DNA from: Macrostomum lignano | Taxonomy: Eukaryota | NCBI GenBank assembly: GCA_002269645.1 | Contig: NIVC01004606.1 | Span: 1 to 40,686 of the forward strand | Reading direction: 5' to 3' | DNA length: 40,686 nucleotides | Notes under the pieces: generated by a model | Seen by the model: the letters and a program-made list of their open reading frames with translations, nothing else | Databases searched by the model: none | What the model was told of the DNA's origin: nothing | Made by a program: the position numbers and the translations under genes | Shown here: positions 17,330 through 40,686 of the stretch, one piece after another | Position numbering within the stretch: the stretch's first letter is position 1 | How the letters are laid out: each line of letters begins with the position of its first letter

Positions 17330-18640
17330 TCTACGCCCCCCGTTGGGGAGCCAAAGAAATGCAATACACGTTTTTTAAATAAGCTACATGTATCCTTGAA
17401 ATCTTAAAAAATCTCCTGTCAAACCTTGTAAGCCTTGACATGTCAGTAATTCCCCCCCACAAGCTTTAACATATCAACTCCCCCCTTGACATCTCAGCAA
17501 TGCCCCCAATAAGCCTTGGAAATCTAAAAATATCTGTCAACCTTCTAACCCTAACCCTAGCCTAACCCTAACCCTAACCCTAACCCTAACCCTAACCCTA
17601 ACCTAACCCTAAAGCATTGAAATTTCAGTAATAATTCTCTCTAAGAGTCATTATAGCACTACTACAGCATTATAGCGATTCCCTGCAAGCCTCGACATCG
17701 TAGGGATTCCCAAATGAATCTCTTAACTTCGACATGAAGCTTCTTTTTTTTTACATTACGCTTTTATCATCCCTCCCCTGACATCAAATAATATAATAAA
17801 ATTTTTTCAATAAACTACATGTAGCTTCTGACTTTAGCCTTGAAATCATTTATACCCCCGTGAGCCTTGACATCTCAGCTATTCCCCTAAACCTTAACAT
17901 GTCAGCGATGGCATCCTTGAAATCTAAAAAATTTTCAATAAACTACATGTAGCTTCTGACTTTAGCCTTGAAATCTCATTTATACCCCGTGAGCCTTGAC
18001 ATCTCAGCTATTCCCCCGTAAACCTTAACATGTCAGCGATGGCCCCATAAACCTTGAAATCTAAAAAATCCCCTCTGTTAACCTTGAAACCCGATAAAAT
18101 CTAACCCTCAACCCACACCTGACCTAAACCTAACTTTAACCCAACCTAAAGCCTTGAAATCTCAGCAATTTTCTCCCCTAAGCCTTGACATTTTAGTGAT
18201 TCCTTCTTTAAGAATCACAGCACTATAACAATTTCCACCAAGCTTTGACCTCGTAGCAATTCCCAAATGAGTCTTTTAACTTCGACATGACTTTTCTTTT
18301 ATGTATACGTAGTGCTACTTTTATTTTTTACATGACTCTTCTTCTATCAGCGCCCCCCCCCCCAGTGGCGAGCCAACAAAGAATACAATAAAAAAATTGA
18401 GTAAAGTACATGAACTTTGAAGTAGCTTCTGACTTTTGCTTTGACATCACAGAAACCCCCCCCCCTAATCTCAGTTATTCTCTGAGAGCCTTGACGTCTC
18501 AGTTTTTCTCCCCAGCACAGCATTATAGCTGCATTTAATTTTTACATGACACCCTTCATGTCTGACATGATGCTTCTTTTATTCTACCATGATGCTTCTT
18601 AATTTTTTAAATGACACTTTCATTAGTTTTTAAATAAGGC
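17330..18640 (+). repeat. Three tandem, diverged copies of a ~440-bp CCCTAA-containing dispersed repeat (non-autonomous element, Helentron-like by inference)
   Basis: Units start near 17330, 17770 and 18350 (units 1 and 3 open with a CGCCCCC...GAGCCAA motif). AGCCTTGA(C/A)ATCTCAGC subrepeats; internal ~127-bp direct duplication (about 17804-17930 and 17931-18070). Units 1 and 2 end in TTAACTTCGACATGA...TTTTTACAT. Confidence 0.7.
17545..17612 (-). repeat. Interstitial telomeric repeat (CCCTAA)n, ~11 units with two variants
   Basis: CTAACCCTAACCCTAGCCTAACCCTAACCC...CTAA inside the dispersed repeat. Decayed equivalents near 10605-10655 and 18100-18150. Confidence 0.9.
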
Positions 18641-21600: not shown

Positions 21601-24600
21601 ATGACGCTTCTATGATTTTTACATGACGCTTCTATGATTTTTACATGACGCTTCTATGATTGTTTACATGACGCTTCTATGATTGTTTACATGACGCTTC
21701 TATGATTTTTACATGACGCTTCTATGATTTTTACATGACGCTTCTATGATTGTTTACATGACGCTTCTATGATTTTTACATGACGCTTCTATGATTTTTA
21801 TATGACGCTTCTATGATTGTTTACATGACGCTTCTATGATTTTTACATGACGCTTCTATGATTGTTTACATGACGCTTCTATGATTGTTTACATGACGCT
21901 TCTATGATTTTTACATGACGCTTCTATGATTTTTACATGACGCTTCTATGATTTTTACATGACGCTTCTATGATTTTTACATGACGCTTCTATGATTGTT
22001 TACATGACGCTTCTATGATTTTTACATGACGCTTCTATGATTTTTACATGACGCTTCTATGATTTTTACATGACGCTTCTATGATTTTTACATGACGCTT
22101 CTATGATTGTTTACATGACGCTTCTATGATTTTTACATGACGCTTCTATGATTTTTACATGACGCTTCTATGATTTTTACATGACGCTTCTATGATTTTT
22201 ACATGACGCTTCTATGATTGTTTACATGACGCTTCTATGATTGTTTACATGACGCTTCTATGATTTTTACATGACGCTTCTATGATTGTTTACATGACGC
22301 TTCTATGATTTTTACATGACGCTTCTATGATTTTTACATGACGCTTCTATGATTGTTTACATGACGCTTCTATGATTTTTACATGACGCTTCTATGATTT
22401 TTACATGACGCTTCTATGATTGTTTACATGACGCTTCTATGATTTTTACATGACGCTTCTATGATTGTTTACATGACGCTTCTATGATTTTTACATGACG
22501 CTTCTATGATTTTTACATGACGCTTCTATGATTTTTACATGACGCTTCTATGATTTTTACATGACGCTTCTATGATTTTTACATGACGCTTCTATGATTT
22601 TTACATGACGCTTCTATGATTTTTACATGACGCTTCTATGATTTTTACATGACGCTTCTATGATTTTTACATGACGCTTCTATGATTTTTACATGACGCT
22701 TCTATGATTTTTACATGACGCTTCTATGATTTTTACATGACGCTTCTATGATTTTTACATGACGCTTCTATGATTGTTTACATGACGCTTCTATGATTTT
22801 TACATGACGCTTCTATGATTGTTTACATGACGCTTCTATGATTTTTACATGACGCTTCTATGATTTTTACATGACGCTTCTATGATTGTTTACATGACGC
22901 TTCTATGATTTTTACATGACGCTTCTATGATTTTTACATGACGCTTCTATGATTGTTTACATGACGCTTCTATGATTTTTACATGACGCTTCTATGATTT
23001 TTACATGACGCTTCTATGATTGTTTACATGACGCTTCTATGATTTTTACATGACGCTTCTATGATTTTTACATGACGCTTCTATGATTGTTTACATGACG
23101 CTTCTATGATTTTTACATGACGCTTCTATGATTTTTACATGACGCTTCTATGATTTTTACATGACGCTTCTATGATTTTTACATGACGCTTCTATGATTT
23201 TTACATGACGCTTCTATGATTTTTACATGACGCTTCTATGATTTTTACATGACGCTTCTATGATTTTTACATGACGCTTCTATGATTTTTACATGACGCT
23301 TCTATGATTGTTTACATGACGCTTCTATGATTTTTACATGACGCTTCTATGATTGTTTACATGACGCTTCTATGATTGTTTACATGACGCTTCTATGATT
23401 TTTACATGACGCTTCTATGATTTTTACATGACGCTTCTATGATTGTTTACATGACGCTTCTATGATTTTTACATGACGCTTCTATGATTTTTACATGACG
23501 CTTCTATGATTTTTACATGACGCTTCTATGATTTTTACATGACGCTTCTATGATTTTTACATGACGCTTCTATGATTTTTACATGACGCTTCTATGATTG
23601 TTTACATGACGCTTCTATGATTTTTACATGACGCTTCTATGATTTTTACATGACGCTTCTATGATTTTTACATGACGCTTCTATGATTTTTACATGACGC
23701 TTCTATGATTTTTACATGACGCTTCTATGATTTTTACATGACGCTTCTATGATTTTTACATGACGCTTCTATGATTTTTACATGACGCTTCTATGATTGT
23801 TTACATGACGCTTCTATGATTTTTACATGACGCTTCTATGATTTTTACATGACGCTTCTATGATTTTTACATGACGCTTCTATGATTTTTACATGACGCT
23901 TCTATGATTTTTACATGACGCTTCTATGATTTTTACATGACGCTTCTATGATTTTTACATGACGCTTCTATGATTTTTACATGACGCTTCTATGATTGTT
24001 TACATGACGCTTCTATGATTTTTACATGACGCTTCTATGATTTTTACATGACGCTTCTATGATTTTTACATGACGCTTCTATGATTTTTACATGACGCTT
24101 CTATGATTTTTACATGACGCTTCTATGATTTTTACATGACGCTTCTATGATTTTTACATGACGCTTCTATGATTTTTACATGACGCTTCTATGATTTTTA
24201 CATGACGCTTCTATGATTTTTACATGACGCTTCTATGATTTTTACATGACGCTTCTATGATTTTTACATGACGCTTCTATGATTTTTACATGACGCTTCT
24301 ATGATTTTTACATGACGCTTCTATGATTTTTACATGACGCTTCTATGATTTTTACATGACGCTTCTATGATTGTTTACATGACGCTTCTATGATTTTTAC
24401 ATGACGCTTCTATGATTTTTACATGACGCTTCTATGATTTTTACATGACGCTTCTATGATTTTTACATGACGCTTCTATGATTTTTACATGACGCTTCTA
24501 TGATTTTTACATGACGCTTCTATGATTTTTACATGACGCTTCTATGATTTTTACATGACGCTTCTATGATTTTTACATGACGCTTCTATGATTGTTTACA

Positions 24601-27600
24601 TGACGCTTCTATGATTTTTACATGACGCTTCTATGATTTTTACATGACGCTTCTATGATTTTTACATGACGCTTCTATGATTTTTACATGACGCTTCTAT
24701 GATTTTTACATGACGCTTCTATGATTGTTTACATGACGCTTCTATGATTGTTTACATGACGCTTCTATGATTTTTACATGACGCTTCTATGATTTTTACA
24801 TGACGCTTCTATGATTTTTACATGACGCTTCTATGATTTTTACATGACGCTTCTATGATTTTTACATGACGCTTCTATGATTTTTACATGACGCTTCTAT
24901 GATTTTTACATGACGCTTCTATGATTGTTTACATGACGCTTCTATGATTTTTACATGACGCTTCTATGATTTTTACATGACGCTTCTATGATTTTTACAT
25001 GACGCTTCTATGATTTTTACATGACGCTTCTATGATTGTTTACATGACGCTTCTATGATTTTTACATGACGCTTCTATGATTTTTACATGACGCTTCTAT
25101 GATTTTTACATGACGCTTCTATGATTTTTACATGACGCTTCTATGATTTTTACATGACGCTTCTATGATTTTTACATGACGCTTCTATGATTTTTACATG
25201 ACGCTTCTATGATTGTTTACATGACGCTTCTATGATTTTTACATGACGCTTCTATGATTTTTACATGACGCTTCTATGATTTTTACATGACGCTTCTATG
25301 ATTGTTTACATGACGCTTCTATGATTTTTACATGACGCTTCTATGATTTTTACATGACGCTTCTATGATTTTTACATGACGCTTCTATGATTTTTACATG
25401 ACGCTTCTATGATTTTTACATGACGCTTCTATGATTTTTACATGACGCTTCTATGATTGTTTACATGACGCTTCTATGATTTTTACATGACGCTTCTATG
25501 ATTTTTACATGACGCTTCTATGATTTTTACATGACGCTTCTATGATTTTTACATGACGCTTCTATGATTTTTACATGACGCTTCTATGATTTTTACATGA
25601 CGCTTCTATGATTTTTACATGACGCTTCTATGATTTTTACATGACGCTTCTATGATTTTTACATGACGCTTCTATGATTGTTTACATGACGCTTCTATGA
25701 TTTTTACATGACGCTTCTATGATTTTTACATGACGCTTCTATGATTGTTTACATGACGCTTCTATGATTTTTACATGACGCTTCTATGATTTTTACATGA
25801 CGCTTCTATGATTGTTTACATGACGCTTCTATGATTGTTTACATGACGCTTCTATGATTTTTACATGACGCTTCTATGATTTTTACATGACGCTTCTATG
25901 ATTTTTACATGACGCTTCTATGATTTTTTACATGACGCTTCTATGATTGTTTACATGACGCTTCTATGATTTTTACATGACGCTTCTATGATTGTTTACA
26001 TGACGCTTCTATGATTTTTACATGACGCTTCTATGATTTTTACATGACGCTTCTATGATTGTTTACATGACGCTTCTATGATTGTTTACATGACGCTTCT
26101 ATGATTTTTACATGACGCTTCTATGATTTTTACATGACGCTTCTATGATTTTTACATGACGCTTCTATGATTTTTACATGACGCTTCTATGATTTTTACA
26201 TGACGCTTCTATGATTTTTACATGACGCTTCTATGATTTTTACATGACGCTTCTATGATTTTTACATGACGCTTCTATGATTTTTACATGACGCTTCTAT
26301 GATTTTTACATGACGCTTCTATGATTTTTACATGACGCTTCTATGATTTTTACATGACGCTTCTATGATTTTTACATGACGCTTCTATGATTTTTACATG
26401 ACGCTTCTATGATTTTTACATGACGCTTCTATGATTTTTACATGACGCTTCTATGATTTTTACATGACGCTTCTATGATTTTTACATGACGCTTCTATGA
26501 TTTTTACATGACGCTTCTATGATTTTTACATGACGCTTCTATGATTTTTACATGACGCTTCTATGATTTTTACATGACGCTTCTATGATTTTTACATGAC
26601 GCTTCTATGATTTTTACATGACGCTTCTATGATTTTTACATGACGCTTCTATGATTTTTACATGACGCTTCTATGATTTTTACATGACGCTTCTATGATT
26701 TTTACATGACGCTTCTATGATTTTTACATGACGCTTCTATGATTTTTACATGACGCTTCTATGATTTTTACATGACGCTTCTATGATTTTTACATGACGC
26801 TTCTATGATTTTTACATGACGCTTCTATGATTTTTACATGACGCTTCTATGATTTTTACATGACGCTTCTATGATTTTTACATGACGCTTCTATGATTTT
26901 TACATGACGCTTCTATGATTTTTACATGACGCTTCTATGATTTTTACATGACGCTTCTATGATTTTTACATGACGCTTCTATGATTTTTACATGACGCTT
27001 CTATGATTTTTACATGACGCTTCTATGATTTTTACATGACGCTTCTATGATTTTTACATGACGCTTCTATGATTTTTACATGACGCTTCTATGATTTTTA
27101 CATGACGCTTCTATGATTTTTACATGACGCTTCTATGATTTTTACATGACGCTTCTATGATTTTTACATGACGCTTCTATGATTGTTTACATGACGCTTC
27201 TATGATTTTTACATGACGCTTCTATGATTTTTACATGACGCTTCTATGATTTTTACATGACGCTTCTATGATTTTTACATGACGCTTCTATGATTTTTAC
27301 ATGACGCTTCTATGATTTTTACATGACGCTTCTATGATTTTTACATGACGCTTCTATGATTTTTACATGACGCTTCTATGATTGTTTACATGACGCTTCT
27401 ATGATTTTTACATGACGCTTCTATGATTTTTACATGACGCTTCTATGATTGTTTACATGACGCTTCTATGATTTTTACATGACGCTTCTATGATTTTTAC
27501 ATGACGCTTCTATGATTTTTACATGACGCTTCTATGATTTTTACATGACGCTTCTATGATTTTTACATGACGCTTCTATGATTGTTTACATGACGCTTCT

Positions 27601-30600
27601 ATGATTGTTTACATGACGCTTCTATGATTTTTACATGACGCTTCTATGATTTTTACATGACGCTTCTATGATTGTTTACATGACGCTTCTATGATTTTTA
27701 CATGACGCTTCTATGATTTTTACATGACGCTTCTATGATTGTTTACATGACGCTTCTATGATTTTTACATGACGCTTCTATGATTTTTACATGACGCTTC
27801 TATGATTTTTACATGACGCTTCTATGATTGTTTACATGACGCTTCTATGATTTTTACATGACGCTTCTATGATTTTTACATGACGCTTCTATGATTGTTT
27901 ACATGACGCTTCTATGATTTTTACATGACGCTTCTATGATTTTTACATGACGCTTCTATGATTTTTACATGACGCTTCTATGATTTTTACATGACGCTTC
28001 TATGATTTTTACATGACGCTTCTATGATTTTTACATGACGCTTCTATGATTGTTTACATGACGCTTCTATGATTTTTACATGACGCTTCTATGATTTTTA
28101 CATGACGCTTCTATGATTTTTACATGACGCTTCTATGATTTTTACATGACGCTTCTATGATTTTTACATGACGCTTCTATGATTTTTACATGACGCTTCT
28201 ATGATTTTTACATGACGCTTCTATGATTTTTACATGACGCTTCTATGATTTTTACATGACGCTTCTATGATTTTTACATGACGCTTCTATGATTGTTTAC
28301 ATGACGCTTCTATGATTTTTACATGACGCTTCTATGATTTTTACATGACGCTTCTATGATTTTTACATGACGCTTCTATGATTTTTACATGACGCTTCTA
28401 TGATTTTTACATGACGCTTCTATGATTTTTACATGACGCTTCTATGATTTTTACATGACGCTTCTATGATTTTTACATGACGCTTCTATGATTTTTACAT
28501 GACGCTTCTATGATTTTTACATGACGCTTCTATGATTTTTACATGACGCTTCTATGATTTTTACATGACGCTTCTATGATTGTTTACATGACGCTTCTAT
28601 GATTTTTACATGACGCTTCTATGATTTTTACATGACGCTTCTATGATTTTTACATGACGCTTCTATGATTGTTTACATGACGCTTCTATGATTTTTACAT
28701 GACGCTTCTATGATTGTTTACATGACGCTTCTATGATTGTTTACATGACGCTTCTATGATTTTTACATGACGCTTCTATGATTGTTTACATGACGCTTCT
28801 ATGATTGTTTACATGACGCTTCTATGATTTTTACATGACGCTTCTATGATTTTTACATGACGCTTCTATGATTTTTACATGACGCTTCTATGATTTTTAC
28901 ATGACGCTTCTATGATTGTTTACATGACGCTTCTATGATTTTTACATGACGCTTCTATGATTTTTACATGACGCTTCTATGATTTTTACATGACGCTTCT
29001 ATGATTTTTACATGACGCTTCTATGATTGTTTACATGACGCTTCTATGATTTTTACATGACGCTTCTATGATTTTTACATGACGCTTCTATGATTTTTAC
29101 ATGACGCTTCTATGATTTTTACATGACGCTTCTATGATTTTTACATGACGCTTCTATGATTTTTACATGACGCTTCTATGATTTTTACATGACGCTTCTA
29201 TGATTTTTACATGACGCTTCTATGATTGTTTACATGACGCTTCTATGATTTTTACATGACGCTTCTATGATTTTTACATGACGCTTCTATGATTTTTACA
29301 TGACGCTTCTATGATTTTTATATGACGCTTCTATGATTTTTACATGACGCTTCTATGATTGTTTACATGACGCTTCTATGATTTTTACATGACGCTTCTA
29401 TGATTTTTACATGACGCTTCTATGATTTTTACATGACGCTTCTATGATTTTTACATGACGCTTCTATGATTTTTACATGACGCTTCTATGATTTTTACAT
29501 GACGCTTCTATGATTTTTACATGACGCTTCTATGATTTTTACATGACGCTTCTATGATTTTTACATGACGCTTCTATGATTTTTACATGACGCTTCTATG
29601 ATTTTTACATGACGCTTCTATGATTTTTACATGACGCTTCTATGATTTTTACATGACGCTTCTATGATTTTTATATGACGCTTCTATGATTTTTACATGA
29701 CGCTTCTATGATTTTTACATGACGCTTCTATGATTTTTTACATGACGCTTCTATGATTGTTTACATGACGCTTCTATGATTTTTACATGACGCTTCTATG
29801 ATTTTTACATGACGCTTCTATGATTTTTTACATGACGCTTCTATGATTTTTACATGACGCTTCTATGATTTTTACATGACGCTTCTATGATTTTTACATG
29901 ACGCTTCTATGATTTTTACATGACGCTTCTATGATTTTTTACATGACGCTTCTATGATTTTTACATGACGCTTCTATGATTTTTACATGACGCTTCTATG
30001 ATTGTTTACATGACGCTTCTATGATTTTTTACATGACGCTTCTATGATTGTTTACATGACGCTTCTATGATTGTTTACATGACGCTTCTATGATTTTTAC
30101 ATGACGCTTCTATGATTGTTTACATGACGCTTCTATGATTTTTACATGACGCTTCTATGATTTTTACATGACGCTTCTATGATTTTTACATGACGCTTCT
30201 ATGATTTTTACATGACGCTTCTATGATTTTTACATGACGCTTCTATGATTTTTACATGACGCTTCTATGATTTTTACATGACGCTTCTATGATTTTTACA
30301 TGACGCTTCTATGATTTTTACATGACGCTTCTATGATTTTTACATGACGCTTCTATGATTTTTACATGACGCTTCTATGATTTTTACATGACGCTTCTAT
30401 GATTTTTACATGACGCTTCTATGATTTTTACATGACGCTTCTATGATTTTTACATGACGCTTCTATGATTTTTACATGACGCTTCTATGATTTTTACATG
30501 ACGCTTCTATGATTTTTACATGACGCTTCTATGATTTTTACATGACGCTTCTATGATTGTTTACATGACGCTTCTATGATTTTTACATGACGCTTCTATG

Positions 30601-33114
30601 ATTTTTACATGACGCTTCTATGATTTTTACATGACGCTTCTATGATTTTTACATGACGCTTCTATGATTGTTTACATGACGCTTCTATGATTGTTTACAT
30701 GACGCTTCTATGATTTTTACATGACGCTTCTATGATTGTTTACATGACGCTTCTATGATTGTTTACATGACGCTTCTATGATTTTTACATGACGCTTCTA
30801 TGATTTTTATGACGCTTCTATGATTTTTACATGACGCTTCTATGATTTTTACATGACGCTTCTATGATTGTTTACATGACGCTTCTATGATTGTTTACAT
30901 GACGCTTCTATGATTTTTACATGACGCTTCTATGATTTTTACATGACGCTTCTATGATTTTTACATGACGCTTCTATGATTTTTTACATGACGCTTCTAT
31001 GATTTTTACATGACGCTTCTATGATTGTTTACATGACGCTTCTATGATTGTTTACATGACGCTTCTATGATTGTTTACATGACGCTTCTATGATTTTTAC
31101 ATGACGCTTCTATGATTTTTACATGACGCTTCTATGATTGTTTACATGACGCTTCTATGATTTTTACATGACGCTTCTATGATTTTTACATGACGCTTCT
31201 ATGATTGTTTACATGACGCTTCTATGATTTTTACATGACGCTTCTATGATTTTTATATGACGCTTCTATGATTGTTTACATGACGCTTCTATGATTTTTA
31301 CATGACGCTTCTATGATTTTTACATGACGCTTCTATGATTGTTTACATGACGCTTCTATGATTGTTTACATGACGCTTCTATGATTGTTTATGACGCTTC
31401 TATGATTTTTTACATGACGCTTCTATGATTTTTACATGACGCTTCTATGATTTTTAATGACGCTTCTATGATTGTTTACATGACGCTTCTATGATTGTTT
31501 ACATGACGCTTCTATGATTTTTATATGACGCTTCTATGATTTTTTACATGACGCTTCTATGATTGTTTACATGACGCTTCTATGATTGTTTACATGACGC
31601 TTCTATGATTTTTACATGACGCTTCTATGATTGTTTACATGACGCTTCTATGATTGTTTACATGACGCTTCTATGATTGTTTACATGACGCTTCTATGAT
31701 TGTTTACATGACGCTTCTATGATTGTTTACATGACGCTTCTATGATTTTTTACATGACGCTTCTACGATTTGTTTACATGACGCTTCTATGATTGTTTAC
31801 ATGACGCTTCTATGATTGTTTACATGACGCTTCTATGATTGTTTACATGACGCTTCTATGATTTTTACATGACGCTTCTATGATTTTTACATGACGCTTC
31901 TATGATTTGACGCTTCTATGATTTTCATGACGCTGATTTTTACATGACGCTTCTATGATTTTTATATGACGCTTCTATGATTTTTATATGACGCTTCTAT
32001 GATTTTTTACATGACGCTTCTATGATTTTTACATGACGCTTCTATGATCTTTACATGACGCTTCTATGATTTTTACATGACGCTTCTATGATTGTTTACA
32101 TGACGCTTCTATGATTTTTATGACGCTTCTATGATTTTTTACATGACGCTTCTATGATTTTTACATGACGCTTCTATGATTTTTTACATGACGCTTCTAT
32201 GATTGTTTACATGACGCTTCTATGATTTTTATATGACGCTTCTATGATTTTTACATGACGCTTCTATGATTGTTTACATGACGCTTCTATGATTTTTACA
32301 TGACGCTTCTATGATTTTTATATGACGCTTCTATGATTGTTTACATGACGCTTCTATGATTTTTACATGACGCTTCTATGATTTTTACATGACGCTTCTA
32401 TGATTTTTTAATGACGCTTCTATGATTTTTATATGACGCTTCTATGATTTTTTACATGACGCTTCTATGATTTTTATATGACGCTTCTATGATTTTTTAC
32501 ATGACGCTTCTATGATTGTTTACATGACGCTTTTATGATTTTTATATGACGCTTCTATGAGTTTTTACATGACGCTTCTATGATTGTTTACATGACGCTT
32601 CTATGATTGTTTACATGACGCTTCTATGATTGTTAACATGACGCTTCTATGATTTTTTACATGACGCTTCTATGATTTTTATATGACGCTTCTATGATTT
32701 TTTAAATGACGCTTCTATGATTTTTATATGACGCTTCTATGATTGTTTACATGACGCTTCTATGATTGTTTACATGACGCTTCTATGATTTTTTAATGAC
32801 GCTCTATGATTTTTATATGACGCTACTATGGTTTTTATATGACGCTTCTATGATTTTTACATGACGCTTCTATGATTGTTAACATGACGCTTCTATGATT
32901 TTTTACATGACATGATTTTTATATGACGCTTCTATGATTTTTTAAATGACGCTTCTATGATTTTTATATGACGCTTCTATGATTGTTTACATGACGCTTC
33001 TATGATTGTTTACATGACGCTTCTATGATTTTTTAAATGATGCATCTATGATTTTTATATGACGCTACTATGATTTTTTATATGACGCTTCTATGATTTT
33101 TACATGACGCTTCT
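18639..33114. repeat. ~14.5-kb satellite of 22/23-bp monomers CATGACGCTTCTATGATT(G)TTTA, roughly 650 copies
   Basis: Directly visible. Main variants are the 22-mer (T5), 23-mers (TTGTTT or T6) and a C>T variant TATGACG. Degenerate at both edges. Copy number is length divided by ~22.3. Confidence 0.99.
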
Positions 33115-33639
33115 TTTTAAAAAGTCTTTTAGTTTTCCTGACGTTGAAAAGCTTTAATTAAAAAAATTATACTCTACGAAAATTCGAACCATCGTCGCTG
33201 CATTTAGCAGTTCAGTTTGTTCACCTCTAGGCTAGCTCTCATCGTTTTGATAACATCAAATTTTGCACTTATATAATTCAAAACTTGAAAATCCAAGCAT
33301 AGAGTAAATCACACGAAGCAGTTATGACATAATCAGTTTCTCAGTCAGTCAGTATCAGTTAACAATATGGTTACGCAATTTAAATCAAGTCTGGTGCTAC
33401 GCTTCCACACTGCATTTTCAATTCAAGTCGGAGTTACAATTCAGTTATGATGCAATCTATTTCAGAATCAGAATTCAACCAGTCAGTTTTTTCTCTAGCA
33501 TTCTTACAATGCATTTCAAGTCGAAAAGTTTGCTTGACCTTTGCAAAAAAGCATGTTTTTCGAATATTTAATGCTTTTAGCATCGAGCAATTTCTTAGCC
33601 ACGATGCATGTACCGTCACGGGAAAATTTCTGATCGAAC

Positions 33640-33726
33640 AGTGCAAGTTTGAACAAAATCGGTCCAGCCATTTTTTCTCTAATCGATCACATAGACACAG
33701 ACAGACCATTTTTAGTATATAGATAG
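33640..33726 (+). mobile_element. Helentron/HINE-like terminal segment
   Basis: AAAATCGGTCCAGCC...GACACAGACAGAC...TTTAGTATATAGATAG resembles the end of non-autonomous Helentron-like elements as I recall them. The 13-mer TTTAGTATATAGA (33711-33723) recurs at 36457-36469. Confidence 0.4.
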
Positions 33727-33884
33727 AGTGGAACTCCTCCTTCGGAGGAGAAAGGGGAAGAACTCCCATCACCGGAATTCCATTTCCTGAAATATCCATC
33801 AACTGAAATTCCATGCCTTGAACCCTATCTTCCAAATCGTCTCCAAATTCTTTACAAAACCTTTAAAAGACCATAGCTCAAAGA

Positions 33885-34826
33885 CTCTCACGTCTATCAT
33901 ATCTCCTCTCTACTCTCTTCGCTATTATCGTGACTCTCTTCTCTCTTCTCTCTCATATCTTATCTCTACCCCTACTCCCTTATTTATCTCTTCTCCCTCG
34001 TCTTTCGTCTGTACCCTCTCCTGTCTCCTGTCTCCTCTCTTCTCTCTTATCTCTCCCTCTTCTCTTCTCTCTCATATATCATCTCTACTCACTTATCTAT
34101 CGTCTCTCTTAACCCTCTCTCTCTCTTCTCTTTTCTCTTCTCTCAGCTCTCATTTCTCATATCTCAAATACGCTCTCACACTCTACTTTCTTGTCTCCCA
34201 TCTTTCTTTCCTTCTTTCCACTATCCCCTGTCTCTTCTCTTCTCTCTTTTCTATCCTCTCCATTCTCTCTTTTCTCCTCTCCTTGCTCCTTTCATCTTCT
34301 CCCTCTCTTCTCTAATCTCTAATCTCTAATCTCTTCTCTCTTATGTTCTCACGCATCTCTTCTCATCGCATCTCTCATCTCTCCTCTCCGCACTACTTTC
34401 CTCTCTTAACTCTCTCATCTATGATCTTTCATCTCTCTCCTCTCTCCTCTCTCTCTTCTCCTTTCGCTTCTCTCTCCTTTCTCCCCTCTTTTCTCCTCTC
34501 TTCTCTCTCCTCTCTCCCCTGCTCTCTCATCCCTCATCCCCTCATCTCACTCTTTCTTTCTCCTCTACTCTTCCCTCTCTTCTATTTCCTCTGTACGCTC
34601 TTATCCCTCATCTATTCTCTCTCCTATTATCTCTCTTGTATCCCTTTGCTATCTCATATCTCCCCTCTCATCTCCTCTCTCCTCTTCTCTTCTCTCTCCT
34701 TCGTTCCCGCCTTACTCCCCTTTTTTCTCCCATCTGTCATGTCTAATCTCTCCACTCATTTCTACTCTGTTTTCTATCATCTCATCTCTCTTCTCTTTTC
34801 ATTCTTCTCTTTACTCTCTTCTCTAA
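33885..34826 (+). repeat. ~950-bp degenerate (CT)n polypyrimidine tract
   Basis: Plus strand is almost all C/T (TCTC/TCTT/CTCC mosaics) with scattered A and very few G. Confidence 0.95.
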
Positions 34827-34834
34827 CTGATTGA

Positions 34835-35140
34835 AGATGCCAAATCCATCAAGATCCTCTCCGCGCGAAGCAGAAATCCTGTCCGTGCAACTGAAAACCA
34901 TCGAAATCCTCTCCGTGAAACTGGACTCCTTCGAAATCCTCTCCTTGAAACTTAAATCCATCAAAATGGTCTCCATAAAACAGAAATCAATCATAAATTA
35001 TCTCCACGAAACAGAAATTCTCTCCGTCAAAATTAAAACATTGAAATCGTCTCCGCTAAACTGGACTCAATCGAATTTTTTCCGTCAAACAACTCAACTC
35101 CGGATTCATTGGTTAGGGTTAGGGTTAGGGTTAGGGTTAG
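34835..35140 (+). repeat. ~30-bp subrepeat array (GAAATCCTCTCCGTGAAA-like) ending in a (TTAGGG)4 tract
   Basis: About 8 diverged 30-bp units from 34850 to 35095; TTAGGG at 35113, 35119, 35125 and 35131 plus TTAG. Possibly related decayed units at about 33745-33840. Confidence 0.75.
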
Positions 35141-36359
35141 AACTACGCACAGGTTTGTGTTAAAAGGCACTGATAAGAATATTGAACTAATTGAATCAAT
35201 TCATTGCGCAACCGATTTCACAGTCAGTCAGTACCAGTCTCAGTTAAAGTTAACAAAAACATTGCGCAATCTAAATCAACCCTCCAATACACAGCAGCAG
35301 TGAGAAGTTGAACCCTCCCCCCAACTTTATCTATTACGTCTCGCAAAACTGAGTACAATCTTTGCAGAAAGTTAAAAGTATGGAAATAGTTTTTCAAATG
35401 CTGTGCTTTTTCTTTTCATATTTAAAGCAAACAACTTATATCCCCGAACTCAGCGTTGCAAGATCTTTCCAGCAATATAAGTTTCTCTTCTCAAAGTTTA
35501 AAACTCGAGGAACAGTTAGCGTTTGAAATTTACCGATTTCCCAACTGCTTGCTAGAGAAGCTCGCAAGTTTATTCATTGAAATTCACTGCCCAGCTAATA
35601 CACAGGGCCGATAATAAAACCAATTGAATCTCGGCACAGTTCTATCTGTTTACAACAGCTATGTACACTCAGCCCAAGCCCAACCCCCCCGTTCCGGGGA
35701 ATCATTAAATTTAACTCAACCCCTCAACTCGCGGGGTTTTATTTGCATTGAACGCAGAACACGCGCACCCACCACCCCTCAATACACAGCGGCCCGCGAG
35801 CGGAGGTTGGGGTGGCTATTTTTACAAACTGGCTGAAGCCCCAGGCAGAGTAGCAAAAGAAGGTTATTGGGGGTCAAAAAGGCAGTTTTCTGCTTTTTTT
35901 GAGGATCTTAGAAATTAAAATTTCAGAATTAAAATAGCCTATAGCCGACCTCGGATAATTTCCAATCTTCCCAACCTTAAAGCAGAAATTAAGGTGCAAG
36001 TTTTCCCGTTTCTTACTTGCAGAGCGCAATGTACACTCTGTGATGAGTTAAAAAATCAAGCCATCCATTCTCGCGCAGTGTGCACCTCCACCCCTTTTTA
36101 ACACTGAGCAAGTAGGCCGCCAATTCTCAAGTGCCGGCGACCCTCCCCCAGCTGAAATGAAATACACTGCAGAGATAGGAGAAAAGTTGTGGCGCAACCA
36201 TACAAAATAGCGTCAAGTGGGAAGTCCATGGAATGCGATATATAGACATCTGGTCTGGCTGTCTGGTTTGTGCTGTTTTCTGCTTTTTTGAAGCACTTAA
36301 AATTGAAATTTGAAAATGAATTTTAAATTGTAGCATCGTCGGGACATTTGACATGTTTT

Positions 36360-36470
36360 GGTACCGGTTTGAAAGTTGAGTTGCAAGAATCCTAGGAGGA
36401 GATCGTCGACAAACCCGGCCCACCGGCCCACCCTACCACCGGACCACGACGTCAGCTTTAGTATATAGAG
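36360..36470 (+). mobile_element. Second Helentron/HINE-like terminal segment
   Basis: GAATCCTAGGAGGAGATCG...CCGGCCCACCGGCCC...GACGTCAGCTTTAGTATATAGAG shares the TTTAGTATATAGA end motif with 33711-33723. Confidence 0.35.
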
Positions 36471-36690
36471 GATTCGAAATGCTCTTATAACAGTTATGGT
36501 CTAATTTCAGACTGAAATTTTGATTGTTGTCACAGTGGAAACAATTCTTTTACTGTGCAACTTGCACATTTAATGACAGGCACAAAGGCAGGTTTATGAG
36601 TTCCAGTGGGACAAGACATGGCGGTGAATAAAATAAAGTGGAGGCCTTGCTGTGTACACTTTTGGTTTTGCTATGTACACCATTGCATGC

Positions 36691-36763
36691 TGTTTATTGT
36701 AGATCATTGCAGACTGTTTATTCCTTTACAACAGTTTATTCTGTGTTTATTAGACTGTTTATT
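36691..36763 (-). terminator. Cluster of five AATAAA hexamers, putative poly(A) signals downstream of the pogo/OTU reading frame
   Basis: Plus-strand GTTTATT near 36692, 36716, 36734, 36745 and 36757, i.e. AATAAAC on the minus strand. Confidence 0.4.
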
Positions 36764-36974
36764 CAATGACACAGTTCCAAAGCTACTTTACTTTGTTGCA
36801 CCAGTTTTAAGAACAATTCACAAGCACTTTCTTTTGTGTGACTCTGTTTTTTTTCAAATTGATCCTTGGACATTTTTCTTAACAATTGATAAGCAAAACA
36901 GTGCAAAATGACTATGTGTGATTGCAGTGGTTTGCAGGTTGCTCATTAGTTTAGTTGCACGCTTAGAGTGCTAG

Positions 36975-37415
36975 GGTGCTCATTGATCAAGAATTTCTAG
37001 CCAAAGTATATGCTAGACTGCCAGAAGTCCAATGGACATATCCGTTAAAAGTCACAATGGTCGTTTAGATAGTTGGGATGGTGCAGGAAGTATAGTCAGT
37101 GCAACAAGGAGTCTCACATTGCTCATTGGTAAGGCTTGATCAAGAATTTCTAGCCAAAGTATATGCTAGACTGCTAGAAATCCAATGGATACATCCGTTG
37201 AAGGTCCCGATAGTTGTCCAGATGGTCGGGATGGTGCAGGAAGTATAGTGAGTGCGACAGGTAGTGTCATGTTGCTCATTGGTGAGGCTTGATCAAGAAT
37301 TTCTAGCCAAAGTATATGCTAGACTGCTAGAAGTCCAATGGACATATCTGTTGAAGGTCCCAATGGTCATCCAGATGGTCAGGATGGTACAGGAAGTATA
37401 GTGAGTGCAATTAGT
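36975..37415 (-). repeat. 153-bp tandem repeat, ~3 copies (51 codons; decayed Pro/Ser-rich coding repeat by inference)
   Basis: TGATCAAGAATTTCTAGCCAAAG starts at 36984, 37137 and 37290 (period 153). One minus-strand frame reads ALTILPAPSRPSGQLSGPSTDVSIGFLAV*HILWLEILDQ. Confidence 0.85.
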
Positions 37416-37689
37416 TGTAGGATGCTTATTGACAAGATTTCATAATAAATATTTGACCAATTTTTTTTTCGGATCTTAAATTCCGATGATGTCAGAATAT
37501 GCTCATTGAATCTCCTGACAATGGTTAACTGTCAGATGCCAGAGACAGCCAAGGGACTCGCCAGCCGCAAATGCACTGGAGCTCAAGTCGGTGAGGGTCA
37601 GTTGGTCAGTCGGTAAATTATTTATTTATAATTAGTATGTATTCTTAAATCACTTGGCCCTGTGGCAGAACCTAAGCTGGCGCACTATA

Positions 37690-38110
37690 TAGACAAAAGC
37701 AGCATGTAATGATGTTCTGCAATGTGAGCCACCAGTAGAGGACCACTGGTTGGCTTTGTCTGCAATGGTTCAATAACTCTCTATAGATGGCTTTGATGCG
37801 GCATGCAAGTTCTTGACTTTTTCAATGCAGTGGGTAGGAAAATATGAATTTCACACTTTAATATATGGCTAGTAGACAGTACTACAATATTCTCAACGTA
37901 GGAAGTTGGCTTTCGCATGTTGTCCAGGTAGGTAATCAGATTCATGCCAGATTCGTTGAAGTCTTTAGAAACTTTAAAAAATTCTGGGTTTATTAGTTTG
38001 GTGCATGCCAAAGTGTGGAGTCTTATAGGGTCCTTATAGGGAAAGCAGTTGGCAAATAGAGTCAAAAAAGCAATTGCTATCAGCAGCAGCATCACCCAAG
38101 ATGCACCCTA
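37690..38110 (-). pseudogene. OTU-family cysteine protease (deubiquitinase-like) domain, disrupted
   Basis: GDAAADSNCFFDSICQL (Cys loop, Cys codon 38070-38072); after a frameshift YLDNMRKPTSYVENIVVLSTSHILKCEIHIF (variable-loop region); after a TAG at 37781-37783, PLLVAHIAEHHYMLL (His loop, His codon 37709-37711, same frame). Confidence 0.75.
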
Positions 38111-40023
38111 GCCTCTTGCCAATTAAGCGCAGTTTAGATTTTGCATTCTGCAATTCAGCCACTGGATTGAGACTTCTAATCTGGGCCATCTTCTGTAGCT
38201 GCCACTGCTGTGCTGCTGTGGCCTTGTTTTTTTTCATTTCAGCTAGCACTCCTTGGCATTTTAATTGTGCCAATTGTCGATTTCTCGCTTTTGGATTTCT
38301 CTTTGACAAAGAACTTCCAGAAACTTTGGGCTGGTCAATTTAGGCATGCCCGCTTCCCTCGCAATTGAAGGCCGCTGTCGCTTAGGCTGATTAGCTTTTG
38401 GCTTAGGCTACAACATTTCAAGATGGTTGTATTGGTGAGCCACTGAACGTAAAATTTCAAGTGTTGAATTCGGTGAAGACTTTAGAGTCAGAGAGATAGC
38501 ACTTTGATCGGCATCTAAATCAATGCTAGTGGTGCTCACTAAGCAGCTCGGTGCCTCGCCATCACCTTAGACAGCTGAGGTGACATTGCTGCTTGGCACC
38601 TCGCCATCGCCTTGGACAGCCAAGGTGGCATTGCCGCTCGATGCCTTGCCATGGCCTTGGGCAGTCATTGTCGCAGTTGCACCCACTTGCTGGCTGGCCA
38701 AACTGGAGGCAACATACAACTTGTCATATAATAAGGCTTCTAGGTTGAATGGAAAGAGGCCACACACTCGAAACCCAGACTTTACATTGGTAATGGAGAT
38801 TGACTCAGCCAAAGAAGACAAAAACAGTTGTATAAAGTCCATATTACACAGAACTCCAGCTGAATCTAGCCTCGCTTGCTGCGCAATGAGATTGTTCCAA
38901 GCAGCCTTAACTGATCAAAAGACTGCAACATCCAAAGGCTGCATTACATGCATTGTGTTTGGGACTTGGCCAAAAATGTAGACCTGTTTAATAATTTCAG
39001 AATTAATAAATATCTATGAATTGTCAACTGATAGAAGAAAAGATAAAGGGATTATCAATTAAAACAAGATATACAATACCTGATAGAAAGATCAGAATGA
39101 AACAAAATATACTAGCTAGTTTTTTTTACTTTTCAGGAACTCATATAATTAGATAGATTACAGTTAAAGCCTGTTTACATTTTCCTTGCTTAGCAGCTCC
39201 AACATCTAAGCATTATGTTGCAAATTGTAATTATTGCAAAATAAAATCACAGGTCTTCTGATTTTTTCTACTCTAGGTAGGATAGGAATGTCTCCATGAC
39301 CCACTTCCAAAACGACTCCCTGGTCAACCAACCTTTCTTTGTCATGGAATAGTTGTAAATGTCCGCAACATTATGTCTCTTTCCTGCAAAAACAAAATGC
39401 GGTGGCAGCATAGATCACAAGCCTGGATTGTAACCATGATGGTAGCATTTTCTTTTCTACTGTCTTAGTGTAAACAAATTTGGATCCCTTTCTAACAACT
39501 ACTTTGCGGGACTTTCTAGCAAAGTAAGCGCTGAAGTATCTGCTTCTTAGTGACTAAATATTGGGTGTAGTTGATCGGTTGAGGTGTCCAGATTGACAGG
39601 ACACTCTGGTGGCACACAAAGAAGCAGTTTAGCCAACCTTCTGTCATCGTCACTTTTTTTACAGTTTTTAAACTGATCTGAGTTGTCACTAAAAGCAGAA
39701 ATTTCTTTAGGGCTAGAGAGGCCATCTCCAGGACCTGTACTCTAGTCATTGGGATATGCTGCCTTTGCATTGCTAATGTCTCAACAAAGACAGCTTCCTC
39801 TTTGACTGTGAAAACCTGTTTCTGTGAATTAAAAAGGCTTTTGGGGTTTGTTAGATGAAACCTTCCTTATGTGATAAAGCAAAATTTGATGAAAAACACC
39901 AAATCGCTGCACAATGCTCCTATAACTTAACTTTTGAACTTTCACCTGCTTCAAGGAATGTAATAACAACCTGCACAGCTTCATCAAGGTCCTTCACTCA
40001 AGATCTTACCTGATTTTAGCCAT
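38110..40023 (-). pseudogene. pogo/Tigger/Fot1-type transposase pseudogene (psq-like HTH, CENP-B/Tc5 HTH, DDE_1, linker, coiled-coil)
   Basis: Across frameshifts and stops: KLSYRSIVQRFGV; FTVKEEAVFVE...PMTRVQVLEMA...GWLNCFFVCH...LSIWTP; KVVVRKGSKFVY...LPPHFVFAGKR...GWLTRESFWKW...RRPVILF; PNTMHVMQPLDVAVF*SVKAAW; NVKSGFRVCGLFPFN; LTSPKFLEVLCQREIQK. The first catalytic Asp region appears deleted. TIRs not located. Confidence 0.85.
38984..39178 (-). other. Predicted 195-bp phase-0 GT-AG intron in the pogo-type transposase
   Basis: GAAAAT|GTAAAC ... TTAAACAG|GTCTAC. Splicing joins ...SKEN to VYIFGQVPNTMHVMQPLD, restoring the usual spacing before the QPLD motif. The intervening DNA is AT-rich and full of stops. 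Confidence 0.7.
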
Positions 40024-40059
40024 TAGCCTAGTCTTAAACAAAATTCTAACAGGTAGACA

Positions 40060-40470
40060 AAGTATAACAGGAAAAAATATGCTAAGAAGTAAGCAAAGTA
40101 GATAAAGTAGAATAGGCAGTTTAGGTAGGCAAAGTAGATTTAGTAGACAAGGCTAGTTAAATAGTCAAAGCAGTTTATTTAGATAATACAGTAAGTTATT
40201 GTAAATAGGCAAAAGTATGAGTAGGTTAAGTAGACAAGGTTGTTAAGTAAGCAAAGTAGGTTAAATAGACAAGGTTGTTAAGTAAGCAAAGTAGGTTGTA
40301 GATAAGGTTGGTTAATTATAGACAAAATAGTTTATTTAAATAGTACAGTATGTTAAGTAGGCAAGACAGTCTACATAGGTAGGCAAAGTAGGTTGGGGAG
40401 AAAAGGTAGGTTATTTAGGTTAAGTAGGCAAAGTACTCTAAGTTGACAATGTAGCAAAAGTAAAATATGA
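40060..40470. repeat. Decayed minisatellite (TAGGCAAAGTAGGTT-like)
   Basis: Recurrent (T/A)AGGCAAAGTAG and TAGACAAGG motifs, including a near-exact duplication AGACAAGGTTGTTAAGTAAGCAAAGTAGG at about 40231-40295. Confidence 0.6.
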
Positions 40471-40686
40471 GTATAAGTATACAAGCCAGCAAAATTGACT
40501 TAACAATGTTTGAAGTGACCTCCAAAAACTTTCAGATTAGCAGTTGCAAAATGGTTCGAATGCTGTTGATTTAATGTTTAGAAGGTTTAAGAAAAAAACT
40601 AAGTATATCTTATTGCTGGATACATATAGCCAAAGATACTCGCTACAACTTCCGGCGCTATTGTTAAAGAGCGAATAAGAATCCTA

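What the first reader, a model, noticed from the sequence alone, without database searches (positions are those of the whole stretch)
36690..40023. pogo-type transposase apparently fused to an OTU deubiquitinase-like domain
Seen: on one strand, with no obvious non-coding gap apart from one intron, the order is psq-like HTH, Tc5 HTH, DDE_1, three 15-aa linker repeats, a basic/coiled-coil stretch, a complete OTU-like domain (Cys loop and His loop both present), 51-aa Pro/Ser repeats, then five AATAAA. Continuity needs 2-3 frameshifts and several stop read-throughs. The stop at 38567-38569 is TAA where the adjacent repeat has CAA, showing the frame once continued. Established: OTU proteases occur in Helitron/Helentron proteins and Ulp1 proteases in Mutator-like elements. 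I do not recall OTU as a pogo-family domain. Inference: a pogo lineage with its own deubiquitinase, possibly to stabilise the transposase or remove ubiquitin marks from chromatin.
Basis: partly seen in the sequence, partly recalled or inferred. Interest (0 to 1): 0.75.

Follow-up and report, generated by a model that had tools for sequence, protein, structure and literature searches.

The report
Dead pogo transposase fused to OTU
This is a badly decayed copy of a pogo-type transposase gene whose reading frame once ran into an OTU deubiquitinase domain; a nearly intact relative elsewhere shows the fusion is real, and I found no published report of it for this transposon group.

Summary
On the minus strand, 40023 to 37532, lie the remains of one gene: two HTH regions, DDE_1, a repeat linker, a basic helix, an OTU domain and a short tail. 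A stitched reading scores DDE_1 at 33 bits and OTU at 22.3 bits, just under Pfam's cut-off.

The decisive evidence is external. Searching 1.84 billion proteins with the OTU part gave one close hit, P0002 (E 3.6e-13). It carries DDE_1 and OTU in one uninterrupted 644-codon ORF. Its contig L001 reads 892 codons with one in-frame stop and is colinear with the window copy (33% identity). The fusion is therefore ancestral, not a chance juxtaposition.

Corrections:
- About nine frameshifts are needed, not 2-3, plus a deletion that removed the first catalytic Asp motif.
- The "51-aa Pro/Ser repeats" are non-coding 3' tandem repeats.

Open points:
- No TIRs, TSD or further copies could be found.
- The second catalytic Asp is Asn in both copies.

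An active transposon lineage (about 0.55) and a domesticated pogo-OTU gene (about 0.3) both remain possible. OTU fused to a transposase is already known for Ginger1 and Helitrons. I found no report of it for pogo.

The parts
40086..40457 (-). 5' array of short repeats just upstream of the ATG. It holds at least 8 copies of TTGCYTACTTAAC, all in one orientation (40120-40431), inside 35-36-nt units.
   Evidence: 11 matches in the window against 3.8 expected, 8 of them here. L001 has a comparable 19-nt array, CGTTGCTTAATTACTTAAA x6.8, directly upstream of its ATG. The two arrays share TACTTAAC or CTACTTAACC. Chance sharing of an 8-mer between shuffled units is about 0.03.
39832..40023 (-). Putative start (ATG 40023-40021) and a psq-like HTH remnant, read in three frame pieces: 40023-40009, 39997-39923 and 39933-39832.
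   Evidence: The piece aligns with the FGVPRSTL helix of psq-positive relatives. There is no Pfam hit in the window copy itself.
39531..39821 (-). Tc5/CENP-B-type HTH remnant, 97 codons with no stop.
   Evidence: tblastn against L001p residues 63-160 gives E 1.9e-4. That part of L001p is Pfam HTH_Tnp_Tc5 at 30.5 bits.
39179..39511 (-). DDE_1 first part, in four frame pieces. The first Asp motif (IFNCDE in L001) is lost in a deletion of about 90 nt between 39531 and 39511. The second triad position is Asn (codon 39235-39233).
38984..39178 (-). Intron: 195 nt, GTAAAC...AAACAG, phase 0, 25% GC.
   Evidence: The alignment to intron-less L001 has no gap here (KEN|VYIFGQ against QEQ|VILYGL).
38717..38983 (-). 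DDE_1 second part. It carries HVMQPLD (third Asp codon 38932-38930) and GFRVCGLFPFN. One in-frame TGA (38917-38915) sits where L001 has Arg.
38543..38677 (-). Three 45-nt (15-aa) linker repeats. The in-frame TAA at 38569-38567 matches CAA in the sister copies.
38127..38407 (-). Conserved post-DDE segment (ANQ..R...P.LTS) followed by a basic helix. One frame change falls inside it, within the overlap 38339-38303.
   Evidence: The matching part of P0002 (residues 396-446) is predicted as one long helix with pLDDT 63-90.
37688..38126 (-). OTU domain remnant. Cys loop DSNCFF (Cys codon 38072-38070) and His loop EHHY (the His that aligns with the OTUD3 His is codon 37711-37709). It has one frame change near 38038 and one TAG at 37783-37781.
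   Evidence: BLASTP against P0002: 35% identity, E 1e-22.
37532..37687 (-). C-terminal tail ending at TGA 37534-37532. It aligns with the L001 tail (PVHL motif) if a 72-nt GT..AG piece, 37653-37582, is removed. That piece is a tentative second intron or an insertion.
   Evidence: and reading of the sequence. The intron call is inference.
36983..37441 (-). 153-nt tandem repeat x2.8 in the 3' non-coding region. This is not the '51-aa repeats'.
   Evidence: Stops occur in all three minus frames, at least one per unit in each frame.
36693..36763 (-). Five AATAAA signals within degenerate repeats of about 20-24 nt.

Best explanation
The segment 40457-36693 (minus strand) is a dead relic of a pogo-superfamily element of the DD35D spacing class. 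Its single gene encoded one long protein: psq-type HTH, Tc5-type HTH, DDE_1 nuclease, a variable or repeat linker, a conserved basic helix and a C-terminal OTUD3/OTUD5-like OTU deubiquitinase. The OTU domain sits where OTU-less relatives of the same clade carry other C-terminal sequence or none, so it reads as an accessory domain captured into the transposase ORF.

Inferred mechanism for the intact ancestor:
- The HTH domains bind the short repeated motif upstream of the gene (TTGCYTACTTAAC arrays).
- The DDE_1 domain cuts and pastes.
- The tethered OTU removes ubiquitin from the transposase itself or from repair and chromatin factors at the excision or integration site, as proposed for the Ginger1 and Helitron OTU domains.

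Shown: the architecture, its conservation in a second near-intact sequence, and the death of the window copy. Inferred: mobility, DNA binding to the motif array, and any deubiquitinase activity or substrate.
For: Architecture:
- DDE_1 scores 33 bits and OTU 22.3 bits on the stitched window reading.
- In a search of 1.84 billion proteins, the only close relative of the OTU part is P0002, which has DDE_1 (38.6 bits) and OTU (33.7 bits) in one ORF.
- Contig L001 has HTH_Tnp_Tc5, DDE_1 and OTU above the gathering scores, in 892 codons with one stop.
- The window is colinear with L001p from residue 10 to 849.
- The closest solved structures to the L001 OTU are OTUD3 (E 1.1e-7) and OTUD5.

Transposon reading:
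- Both known copies are defective.
- No full-length homologue appears among the hits; only P0008 comes from an NCBI/UniRef-annotated proteome, and it lacks OTU.
- The nearest OTU-less relatives are ordinary pogo-like transposases.
- One of them, L004, has the same short motif arrayed in inverted orientation at both ends, as expected of a transposon.
- The window and L001 both have motif arrays directly upstream of the ATG, with a shared core.
- The window copy lies among satellite DNA and other transposon debris and shows CpG decay.

Precedent: OTU or Ulp1 domains are fused to Ginger1 transposases, and OTU occurs in Helitron proteins (PMC2836005, PMC9741609).
Against: - There are no terminal inverted repeats, no inverted copy of the 5' motif downstream of the gene, and no TA duplication.
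- No second copy exists in the 40.7-kb window.
- The second residue of the catalytic triad is Asn, not Asp, in both OTU-bearing sequences. It is Asp in eight relatives.
- In the model of P0002 the Asn directly follows the beta strand VVLFT, which is the canonical catalytic position. An ancestral Asp-to-Asn change would normally kill cut-and-paste activity.
- The motif-array similarity is only modestly beyond chance (about 0.03 for an 8-mer).
- OTU in the window copy is just below Pfam's own cut-off.
Confidence: 0.55

Rival explanations
1. This is a pseudogene of a domesticated host gene. A pogo transposase lost catalysis but kept its DNA-binding and DDE fold, and was joined to an OTU deubiquitinase. 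That would be analogous to POGK, POGZ, CENP-B and the TIGD genes. The window copy is a dead paralogue or a lost orthologue.
For: - Asn replaces the second catalytic Asp in both the window copy and L001, although the two are only 33% identical, so the change is probably ancestral.
- The L001 ORF stayed almost intact over 892 codons despite that change.
- No TIR or TSD was found.
- The window copy has an intron and poly(A) signals, like an ordinary gene.
- Domestication of pogo transposases with added domains is well documented (PMC7386202, PMC7325037).
Against: - Both known members are broken: about nine frameshifts in the window and a nonsense codon in L001.
- No intact orthologue appears in 1.84 billion representative proteins. 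The only close hit comes from one raw-read assembly.
- A repeated motif array is kept upstream of the gene in two very distant members, which is easier to explain as transposase binding sites.
Confidence: 0.3
2. The same element, but OTU was a second, separate gene or exon product downstream of the transposase in the window's lineage, not a fused domain.
For: In the window, the stretch between DDE_1 and OTU has two stops and one frame change. Continuity there therefore cannot be shown from this copy alone.
Against: - L001 reads from DDE_1 through OTU without any interruption.
- The window is colinear with L001 through the linker, including the ANQ..R...P.LTS segment and the basic helix.
- The TAA at 38569-38567 is CAA in the sister repeats.
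Confidence: 0.07
3. This is a chance juxtaposition: a pogo remnant lying next to an unrelated OTU gene or a Helitron/Ginger fragment.
For: The region is rich in repeats and transposon debris. OTU domains do occur in other transposons (PMC2836005).
Against: The same order, spacing and linker motifs occur in the independent contig L001 within one ORF. No Helitron or Ginger protein domains were detected.
Confidence: 0.03

Closest known systems
pogo superfamily transposases (Pfam DDE_1 with psq/CENP-B-type and Tc5 HTH domains; DD30-35D triad)
   Same: HTH, HTH and DDE_1 occur in the same order. The motifs LPPHFVF.GK, GW.T, RRPV.LF and HVMQPLD are present. There are 35 residues between the second and third triad positions. 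The closest relatives are ordinary pogo-like transposases (spacing classes from PMC7325037).
   Different: It carries a C-terminal OTU domain. The second triad residue is Asn. No TIR or TA duplication was seen. The pogo surveys that the literature searches returned show no occurrence of OTU or Ulp1 in the search counts; in one of them a term search also found no protease or ubiquitin.
Ginger1 DNA transposons (integrase-like DDE transposase with C-terminal OTU or Ulp1)
   Same: An OTU cysteine-protease domain is fused at the C-terminal end of a DDE transposase ORF. Some members have introns, and they are found in invertebrates (PMC2836005).
   Different: The transposase is of a different superfamily: Gypsy-integrase-like with a GPY/F motif, not IS630/Tc1/mariner/pogo. 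The two fusions are therefore independent acquisitions.
Helitron/Helentron proteins with OTU or VTD deubiquitinase domains
   Same: A deubiquitinase-type papain-fold domain is embedded in the main transposition protein (PMC9741609, PMC6431247).
   Different: Helitrons use a rolling-circle Rep/helicase, not a DDE nuclease. Activity was shown for the VTD domains but, according to that paper, not for the transposon OTU domains.
Host genes derived from pogo transposases with added domains (POGK, POGZ, CENP-B, TIGD1-7)
   Same: A pogo-derived HTH plus DDE_1 scaffold is joined to an extra functional domain, and loss of a catalytic residue is possible (PMC7386202, PMC7325037).
   Different: Those genes are intact, syntenic and conserved. 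Here both known members are broken, and no orthologue series is known. The added domain is a deubiquitinase, not KRAB, a zinc finger or a dimerisation domain.
OTUD3/OTUD5 subfamily of OTU deubiquitinases
   Same: These are the best solved-structure matches of the L001 OTU domain (4bou E 1.1e-7; 3pfy E 7.5e-5). The match spans the Cys loop through the His loop.
   Different: Similarity to these solved OTU domains is distant (E 1.1e-7 at best). L001 has Tyr in place of the Asp three residues before the Cys (YGNC against DGNC), while the window has DSNC. No activity data exist.

Membership tests
pogo superfamily transposase | DDE_1 catalytic domain detectable by profile | tested here: met
   The window's stitched reading scores 33 bits against a cut-off of 22. 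L001p scores 47.7 bits.
pogo superfamily transposase | N-terminal psq/CENP-B-type HTH plus Tc5 HTH | tested here: inconclusive
   The window copy gives no Pfam hit. L001p scores HTH_Tnp_Tc5 at 30.5 bits, but psq is not detected. The window aligns colinearly to both regions of psq-positive relatives.
pogo superfamily transposase | Complete Asp-Asp-Asp triad (DD30-35D) | tested here: not met
   The second position is Asn in the window (codon 39235-39233) and in L001 (LFTN). It is Asp in P0001 and P0008-P0014. The first Asp motif is deleted in the window. The third Asp is present in both. The 35-residue spacing fits the DD35D class.
pogo superfamily transposase | Terminal inverted repeats and TA target-site duplication | tested here: inconclusive
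   None was found within 33000-40686. The window ends 663 nt upstream of the ATG, and L001 is cut inside its 5' array, so the ends may lie outside the data.
pogo superfamily transposase | Multiple dispersed copies or evidence of mobility | not testable with these tools
   There is no second copy in the window. No eukaryotic genome collection was searchable by DNA. The metagenome and viral scans found no DDE+OTU locus.
OTU deubiquitinase (Pfam PF02338) | Profile match at or above the gathering score | tested here: inconclusive
   The window scores 22.3 bits against a cut-off of 23.3. Its homologue P0002/L001p scores 33-33.7 bits, above the cut-off. The window is 35% identical to that domain (E 3.6e-13 for the whole library; E 1e-22 pairwise).
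OTU deubiquitinase (Pfam PF02338) | Catalytic Cys loop and His loop present | tested here: met
   The window has DSNCFF and EHHY; L001 has YGNCFF and EHHY.
OTU deubiquitinase (Pfam PF02338) | OTU fold and ubiquitin-cleaving activity | not testable with these tools
   The AlphaFold model of P0002 has pLDDT below 50 over the OTU part, because there is no alignment depth there. No fold search was therefore run. Activity needs a bench assay.
DNA transposases with a fused deubiquitinase-type protease (Ginger1-like arrangement) | Protease domain inside the same ORF as the DDE domain, C-terminal to it | tested here: met
   P0002 is an uninterrupted 644-codon ORF containing DDE_1 and OTU. The window is colinear with it.
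Domesticated pogo-derived host gene | Intact, conserved, syntenic orthologues without transposon ends | tested here: inconclusive
   Catalytic Asn and absent TIRs fit this family. However, both members are broken and no intact orthologue exists among 1.84 billion representatives. Synteny is not testable.

The most novel reading that the evidence does not exclude
The OTU-bearing lineage may no longer be a transposase. It would then be a sequence-directed deubiquitinase: a catalytically dead pogo scaffold (Asp to Asn) whose HTH domains bind arrays of a 13-nt motif (TTGCYTACTTAAC type) and deliver an OTUD3/5-like deubiquitinase to that chromatin. It could act as a host regulator or as a selfish anti-silencing factor. 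It would be the first pogo-derived chromatin enzyme of this kind.
Probability: 0.25. Interest if true: 0.65.

Novelty: new variant of a known kind. Interest (0 to 1): 0.45.

Why it matters
Protease domains that remove ubiquitin or ubiquitin-like modifiers have been picked up independently by several unrelated DNA transposon groups: Helitrons (OTU, VTD), Ginger1 (OTU or Ulp1), Mutator-like elements (Ulp1) and an IS5-like transposase (USP). A pogo-type example would add the most widespread cut-and-paste superfamily to that list. That would strengthen the case that removing ubiquitin is a general need of DNA transposition or of escape from host control.

L001 differs from an open frame by a single nonsense codon. 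It therefore offers a small protein on which the long-untested activity of transposon OTU domains could be assayed directly. The shared Asp-to-Asn change raises a second, testable possibility: a transposase scaffold reused to target a deubiquitinase to DNA.

The window copy itself is dead and has no function.

Tried and rejected
- **Unstitched Pfam scan.** Scanning the three raw minus-strand frames gave only a weak OTU hit (15.4 bits), so stitching was needed.
- **First word-indexed search.** Using the stitched DDE-C to OTU reading found only one OTU-less pogo protein.
- **P0002 as a word-indexed query.** Only two proteins passed the threshold, P0002 itself and P0008; only 8000 candidates were scored, probably crowded out by its low-complexity linker. 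An alignment without the linker worked better.
- **Solved structures.** The window OTU part gave no hit. The L001 OTU part did.
- **Exact look-up of the neighbouring kinase ORF** to identify the organism found nothing on record.
- **SRA run numbers in the literature.** Only one run, that of L004, was cited, in a phytoplasma genome paper. The source organisms of the window and of L001 remain unknown.
- **Metagenome and viral scans.** These returned only generic OTU proteins without DDE_1.
- **TIR searches.** Repeat finding, motif scanning and short-word BLAST between the two flanks all found nothing.
- **Similarity between the 3' regions of L001 and the window** was not found.
- **Structure prediction.** Exact window fragments misaligned. 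The model of P0002 with nine sequences was usable only for the DDE part and the basic helix, so no fold search was run.
- **Stop-codon reassignment (TAA read as Gln).** I considered this for L001 and the window and rejected it for the window. The window's in-frame stops are a mix of TAA, TAG and TGA, and the neighbouring 561-codon kinase ORF is intact under the standard code. The L001 TAA aligns with Gln in the window, which fits a simple CAA-to-TAA mutation.
- **Bacterial promoter/terminator scan of the 3' region** was uninformative.
Full report
**What the window is.** The DNA is eukaryotic and repeat-rich.
- A 14.5-kb array of a 22-nt satellite lies at 18565-33114, and an interstitial (CCCTAA)n run at 17545-17612.
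- An intact, intron-less 561-codon polo-like kinase ORF lies at 6085-7770, and a Tc1/mariner-type HTH remnant at 3619-4005.
- The finding lies at the right-hand end of the window, on the minus strand.

**Checking the observation.** Translating the three minus frames of 36600-40100 and locating the recognisable peptide pieces gives this path:

| Coordinates | Frame | Note |
|---|---|---|
| 40023-40009 | 0 | putative start |
| 39997-39923 | 2 | |
| 39933-39832 | 0 | |
| 39821-39531 | 1 | |
| 39511-39449 | 2 | |
| 39458-39411 | 1 | |
| 39414-39271 | 0 | |
| 39265-39179 | 2 | |
| 39178-38984 | none | intron |
| 38983-38303 | 2 | |
| 38339-38037 | 1 | |
| 38038-37688 | 2 | |

- That is about nine frame changes, seven of them in the first 845 nt. 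There are also at least six in-frame stops: 39208 TAG, 38917 TGA, 38569 TAA, 38410 TAG, 37783 TAG and 37687 TAG.
- The unstitched frames give only a weak OTU hit.
- The stitched reading gives DDE_1 at 33 bits (E 5.6e-8, cut-off 22) and OTU at 22.3 bits (E 2e-4, cut-off 23.3).
- The intron is convincing. It is 195 nt, GTAAAC...AAACAG, phase 0 and 25% GC, and it sits exactly where an intron-less homologue reads through.

**The external evidence.**
- A first word-indexed search found only an OTU-less pogo protein, P0001.
- A full HMMER search of 1.84 billion representative proteins with the window's basic-plus-OTU part gave six hits. P0002-P0006 match Pfam OTU; the sixth, P0007, does not.
- One hit is close: P0002, 644 aa, E 3.6e-13, 35% identity. 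Pfam finds both DDE_1 (38.6 bits) and OTU (33.7 bits) in it.
- Its contig L001 (Logan assembly of run SRR30276804, 3191 nt) starts inside a 19-nt tandem array, with an ATG at 142. It then reads in one frame to 2820, with a single in-frame TAA at 826-828.
- The 892-residue reading has HTH_Tnp_Tc5 (30.5 bits), DDE_1 (47.7) and OTU (33.0), all above the gathering scores.
- The window's stitched reading aligns with it over its whole length at 33% identity. The alignment covers the HTH regions, the DDE_1 motifs, an ANQ..R...P.LTS segment after the nuclease, the basic helix, the OTU domain and the tail.
- The DDE_1-OTU arrangement is therefore older than the split between these two sequences. In L001 it lies within one uninterrupted 644-codon ORF. 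This disposes of chance juxtaposition and makes a separate OTU gene unlikely.

**Corrections from the homologue.**
- The L001 ORF ends about 45 residues after the OTU His loop. The window shows the same tail (PVHL motif) and a TGA at 37534-37532.
- The tail aligns best if a 72-nt GT..AG piece (37653-37582) is removed. Calling that piece an intron is tentative.
- The 153-nt repeats (36983-37441) lie beyond that stop, and all three minus frames carry at least one stop per unit. They are 3' non-coding tandem repeats, not 51-aa protein repeats.
- The window lacks about 36 residues, including the first catalytic Asp motif (IFNCDE in L001). The cause is a deletion between 39531 and 39511.

**Family placement.**
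- A profile of the two sequences without the linker found further relatives, P0009-P0014. They are ordinary pogo-like transposases with HTH_psq, HTH_Tnp_Tc5 and DDE_1.
- P0001, P0009 and P0010 share the post-DDE SPF..L.WP and P.V.TS motifs plus the basic region. They end differently: P0010 has a Cys/His-rich PHD-like segment (a weak Pfam hit), P0008 has DUF547, and others have nothing recognisable.
- The OTU domain therefore occupies a variable C-terminal accessory position in this clade.
- The P0010 locus (L004) has a 13-nt motif, TAGTGTTTGACAC, repeated at both ends in inverted orientation, as a transposon should.
- The closest solved structures to the L001 OTU domain are OTUD3 (E 1.1e-7) and OTUD5.

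**Transposon or domesticated gene?** For a transposon:
- Both known members are defective.
- No full-length homologue appears among the hits. Only P0008 comes from an NCBI/UniRef-annotated proteome, and it lacks OTU.
- Both members have an array of short repeats directly upstream of the ATG, with a shared core. The window has TTGCYTACTTAAC at least 8 times at 40120-40431. L001 has CGTTGCTTAATTACTTAAA 6.8 times.
- By shuffling, two such units share an 8-mer about 3% of the time, so this point is suggestive only.
- The window copy sits among repeats and shows CpG decay: CpG o/e 0.33-0.48 and TpG/CpA o/e 1.3.

Against a transposon:
- There is no TIR, no inverted copy of the 5' motif downstream, no TA duplication and no second copy in the window.
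- The second residue of the catalytic triad is Asn in both OTU-bearing sequences (window ILFCNNYNLQH, L001 VVLFTNLHDSR). Eight relatives have Asp (LF.DGH.SH) in an ungapped alignment.
- In the AlphaFold model of P0002 the Asn directly follows the beta strand VVLFT, which is the canonical place. The spacing to the third Asp is 35 residues, the DD35D class of PMC7325037.
- A shared Asn in two sequences only 33% identical, one of which is almost intact, points to an ancestral change. That would normally abolish cut-and-paste.

I therefore keep both readings open: relic of a pogo-OTU transposon at about 0.55, and pseudogene of a domesticated pogo-OTU gene at about 0.3. In either case the window copy is dead.

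**How it would work (inferred).**
- The HTH domains bind the repeated motif.
- The basic helix is predicted as one long helix with pLDDT 63-90 in P0002. It probably serves as a nuclear-localisation, dimerisation or DNA-contact element.
- The OTU domain, with its Cys and His loops intact in both sequences, removes ubiquitin from the protein itself or from chromatin or repair factors at the bound site. The same role has been proposed, and not tested, for the OTU domains of Ginger1 and Helitrons (PMC2836005, PMC9741609).

**Comparison with what is known.**
- OTU fused C-terminally to a DDE transposase is established for Ginger1 in Hydra, Aplysia and Acyrthosiphon (PMC2836005).
- OTU and VTD deubiquitinase domains occur in Helitron and Helentron proteins (PMC9741609, PMC6431247).
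- Ulp1 occurs in Mutator-like elements, and a USP domain accompanies an IS5-like transposase (PMC2836005).
- The literature searches found no paper that pairs OTU with a pogo, Tigger or DDE_1 transposase, and a term search of one pogo survey found no protease or ubiquitin.
- This is therefore a new variant of a known kind: another independent capture of a deubiquitinase domain, this time by the pogo superfamily.

**Limits.**
- The organisms behind the window and L001 are unknown.
- No eukaryotic genome could be searched by DNA, so copy number, termini and target-site duplication remain untested.
- The OTU fold could not be modelled, because there is no alignment depth there.
- The excess of frameshifts in the 5' third (binomial P about 0.015, my own arithmetic) is unexplained. 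It may partly reflect over-fitting of frames in that region.

Noticed in passing
window 18565-33114: A 14.5-kb tandem array of a 22-nt satellite, ACATGACGCTTCTATGATTTTT, about 650 copies at 96% match, with strong strand asymmetry and CpG o/e about 1.7.
   Followed up: no
window 17545-17612: An interstitial telomere-type repeat, CTAACC x11.7 (that is, (CCCTAA)n), about 1 kb before the satellite array.
   Followed up: no
window 6085-7770 (+): An intact, intron-less 561-codon polo-like kinase ORF (Pkinase 215 bits; POLO_box 22.7 bits, just under the cut-off). It may be a retrogene. The exact protein is not on record in the assembly index.
   Followed up: partly
window 3619-4005 (-): A 128-codon ORF with a Tc1/mariner-type HTH (HTH_23/HTH_28), probably another transposon remnant.
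   Followed up: partly
window 33900-34700 and 8001-10000: A CT-rich low-complexity tract with GC skew of -0.77 (33900-34700), and a 2-kb stretch of 26% GC with no CpG at all (8001-10000).
   Followed up: no
window 36001-40686: The element region has CpG o/e 0.32-0.48 with TpG/CpA o/e about 1.3, lower CpG than most of the rest of the window. The in-frame TGA at 38917-38915 sits where L001 has Arg, which fits a CGA-to-TGA change.
   Followed up: partly
window 40023-39179 versus 38983-37688: Frame changes are unevenly spread: about seven in the first 845 nt of the reading against two in the remaining 1450 nt or so. The excess is unexplained and could be over-fitting of frames in the 5' part.
   Followed up: no
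L004 41-75, 443-502 and 3201-3270: An OTU-less relative (the P0010 locus) has the motif TAGTGTTTGACAC repeated at both ends in inverted orientation, an apparent 5' UTR intron, and a Cys/His-rich PHD-like C-terminus. The only paper found citing its run (SRR12000859) is a phytoplasma genome report.
   Followed up: partly
L001 826-828: The single in-frame TAA of the near-intact homologue aligns with Gln (CAG) in the window copy, which fits a recent CAA-to-TAA nonsense mutation.
   Followed up: partly
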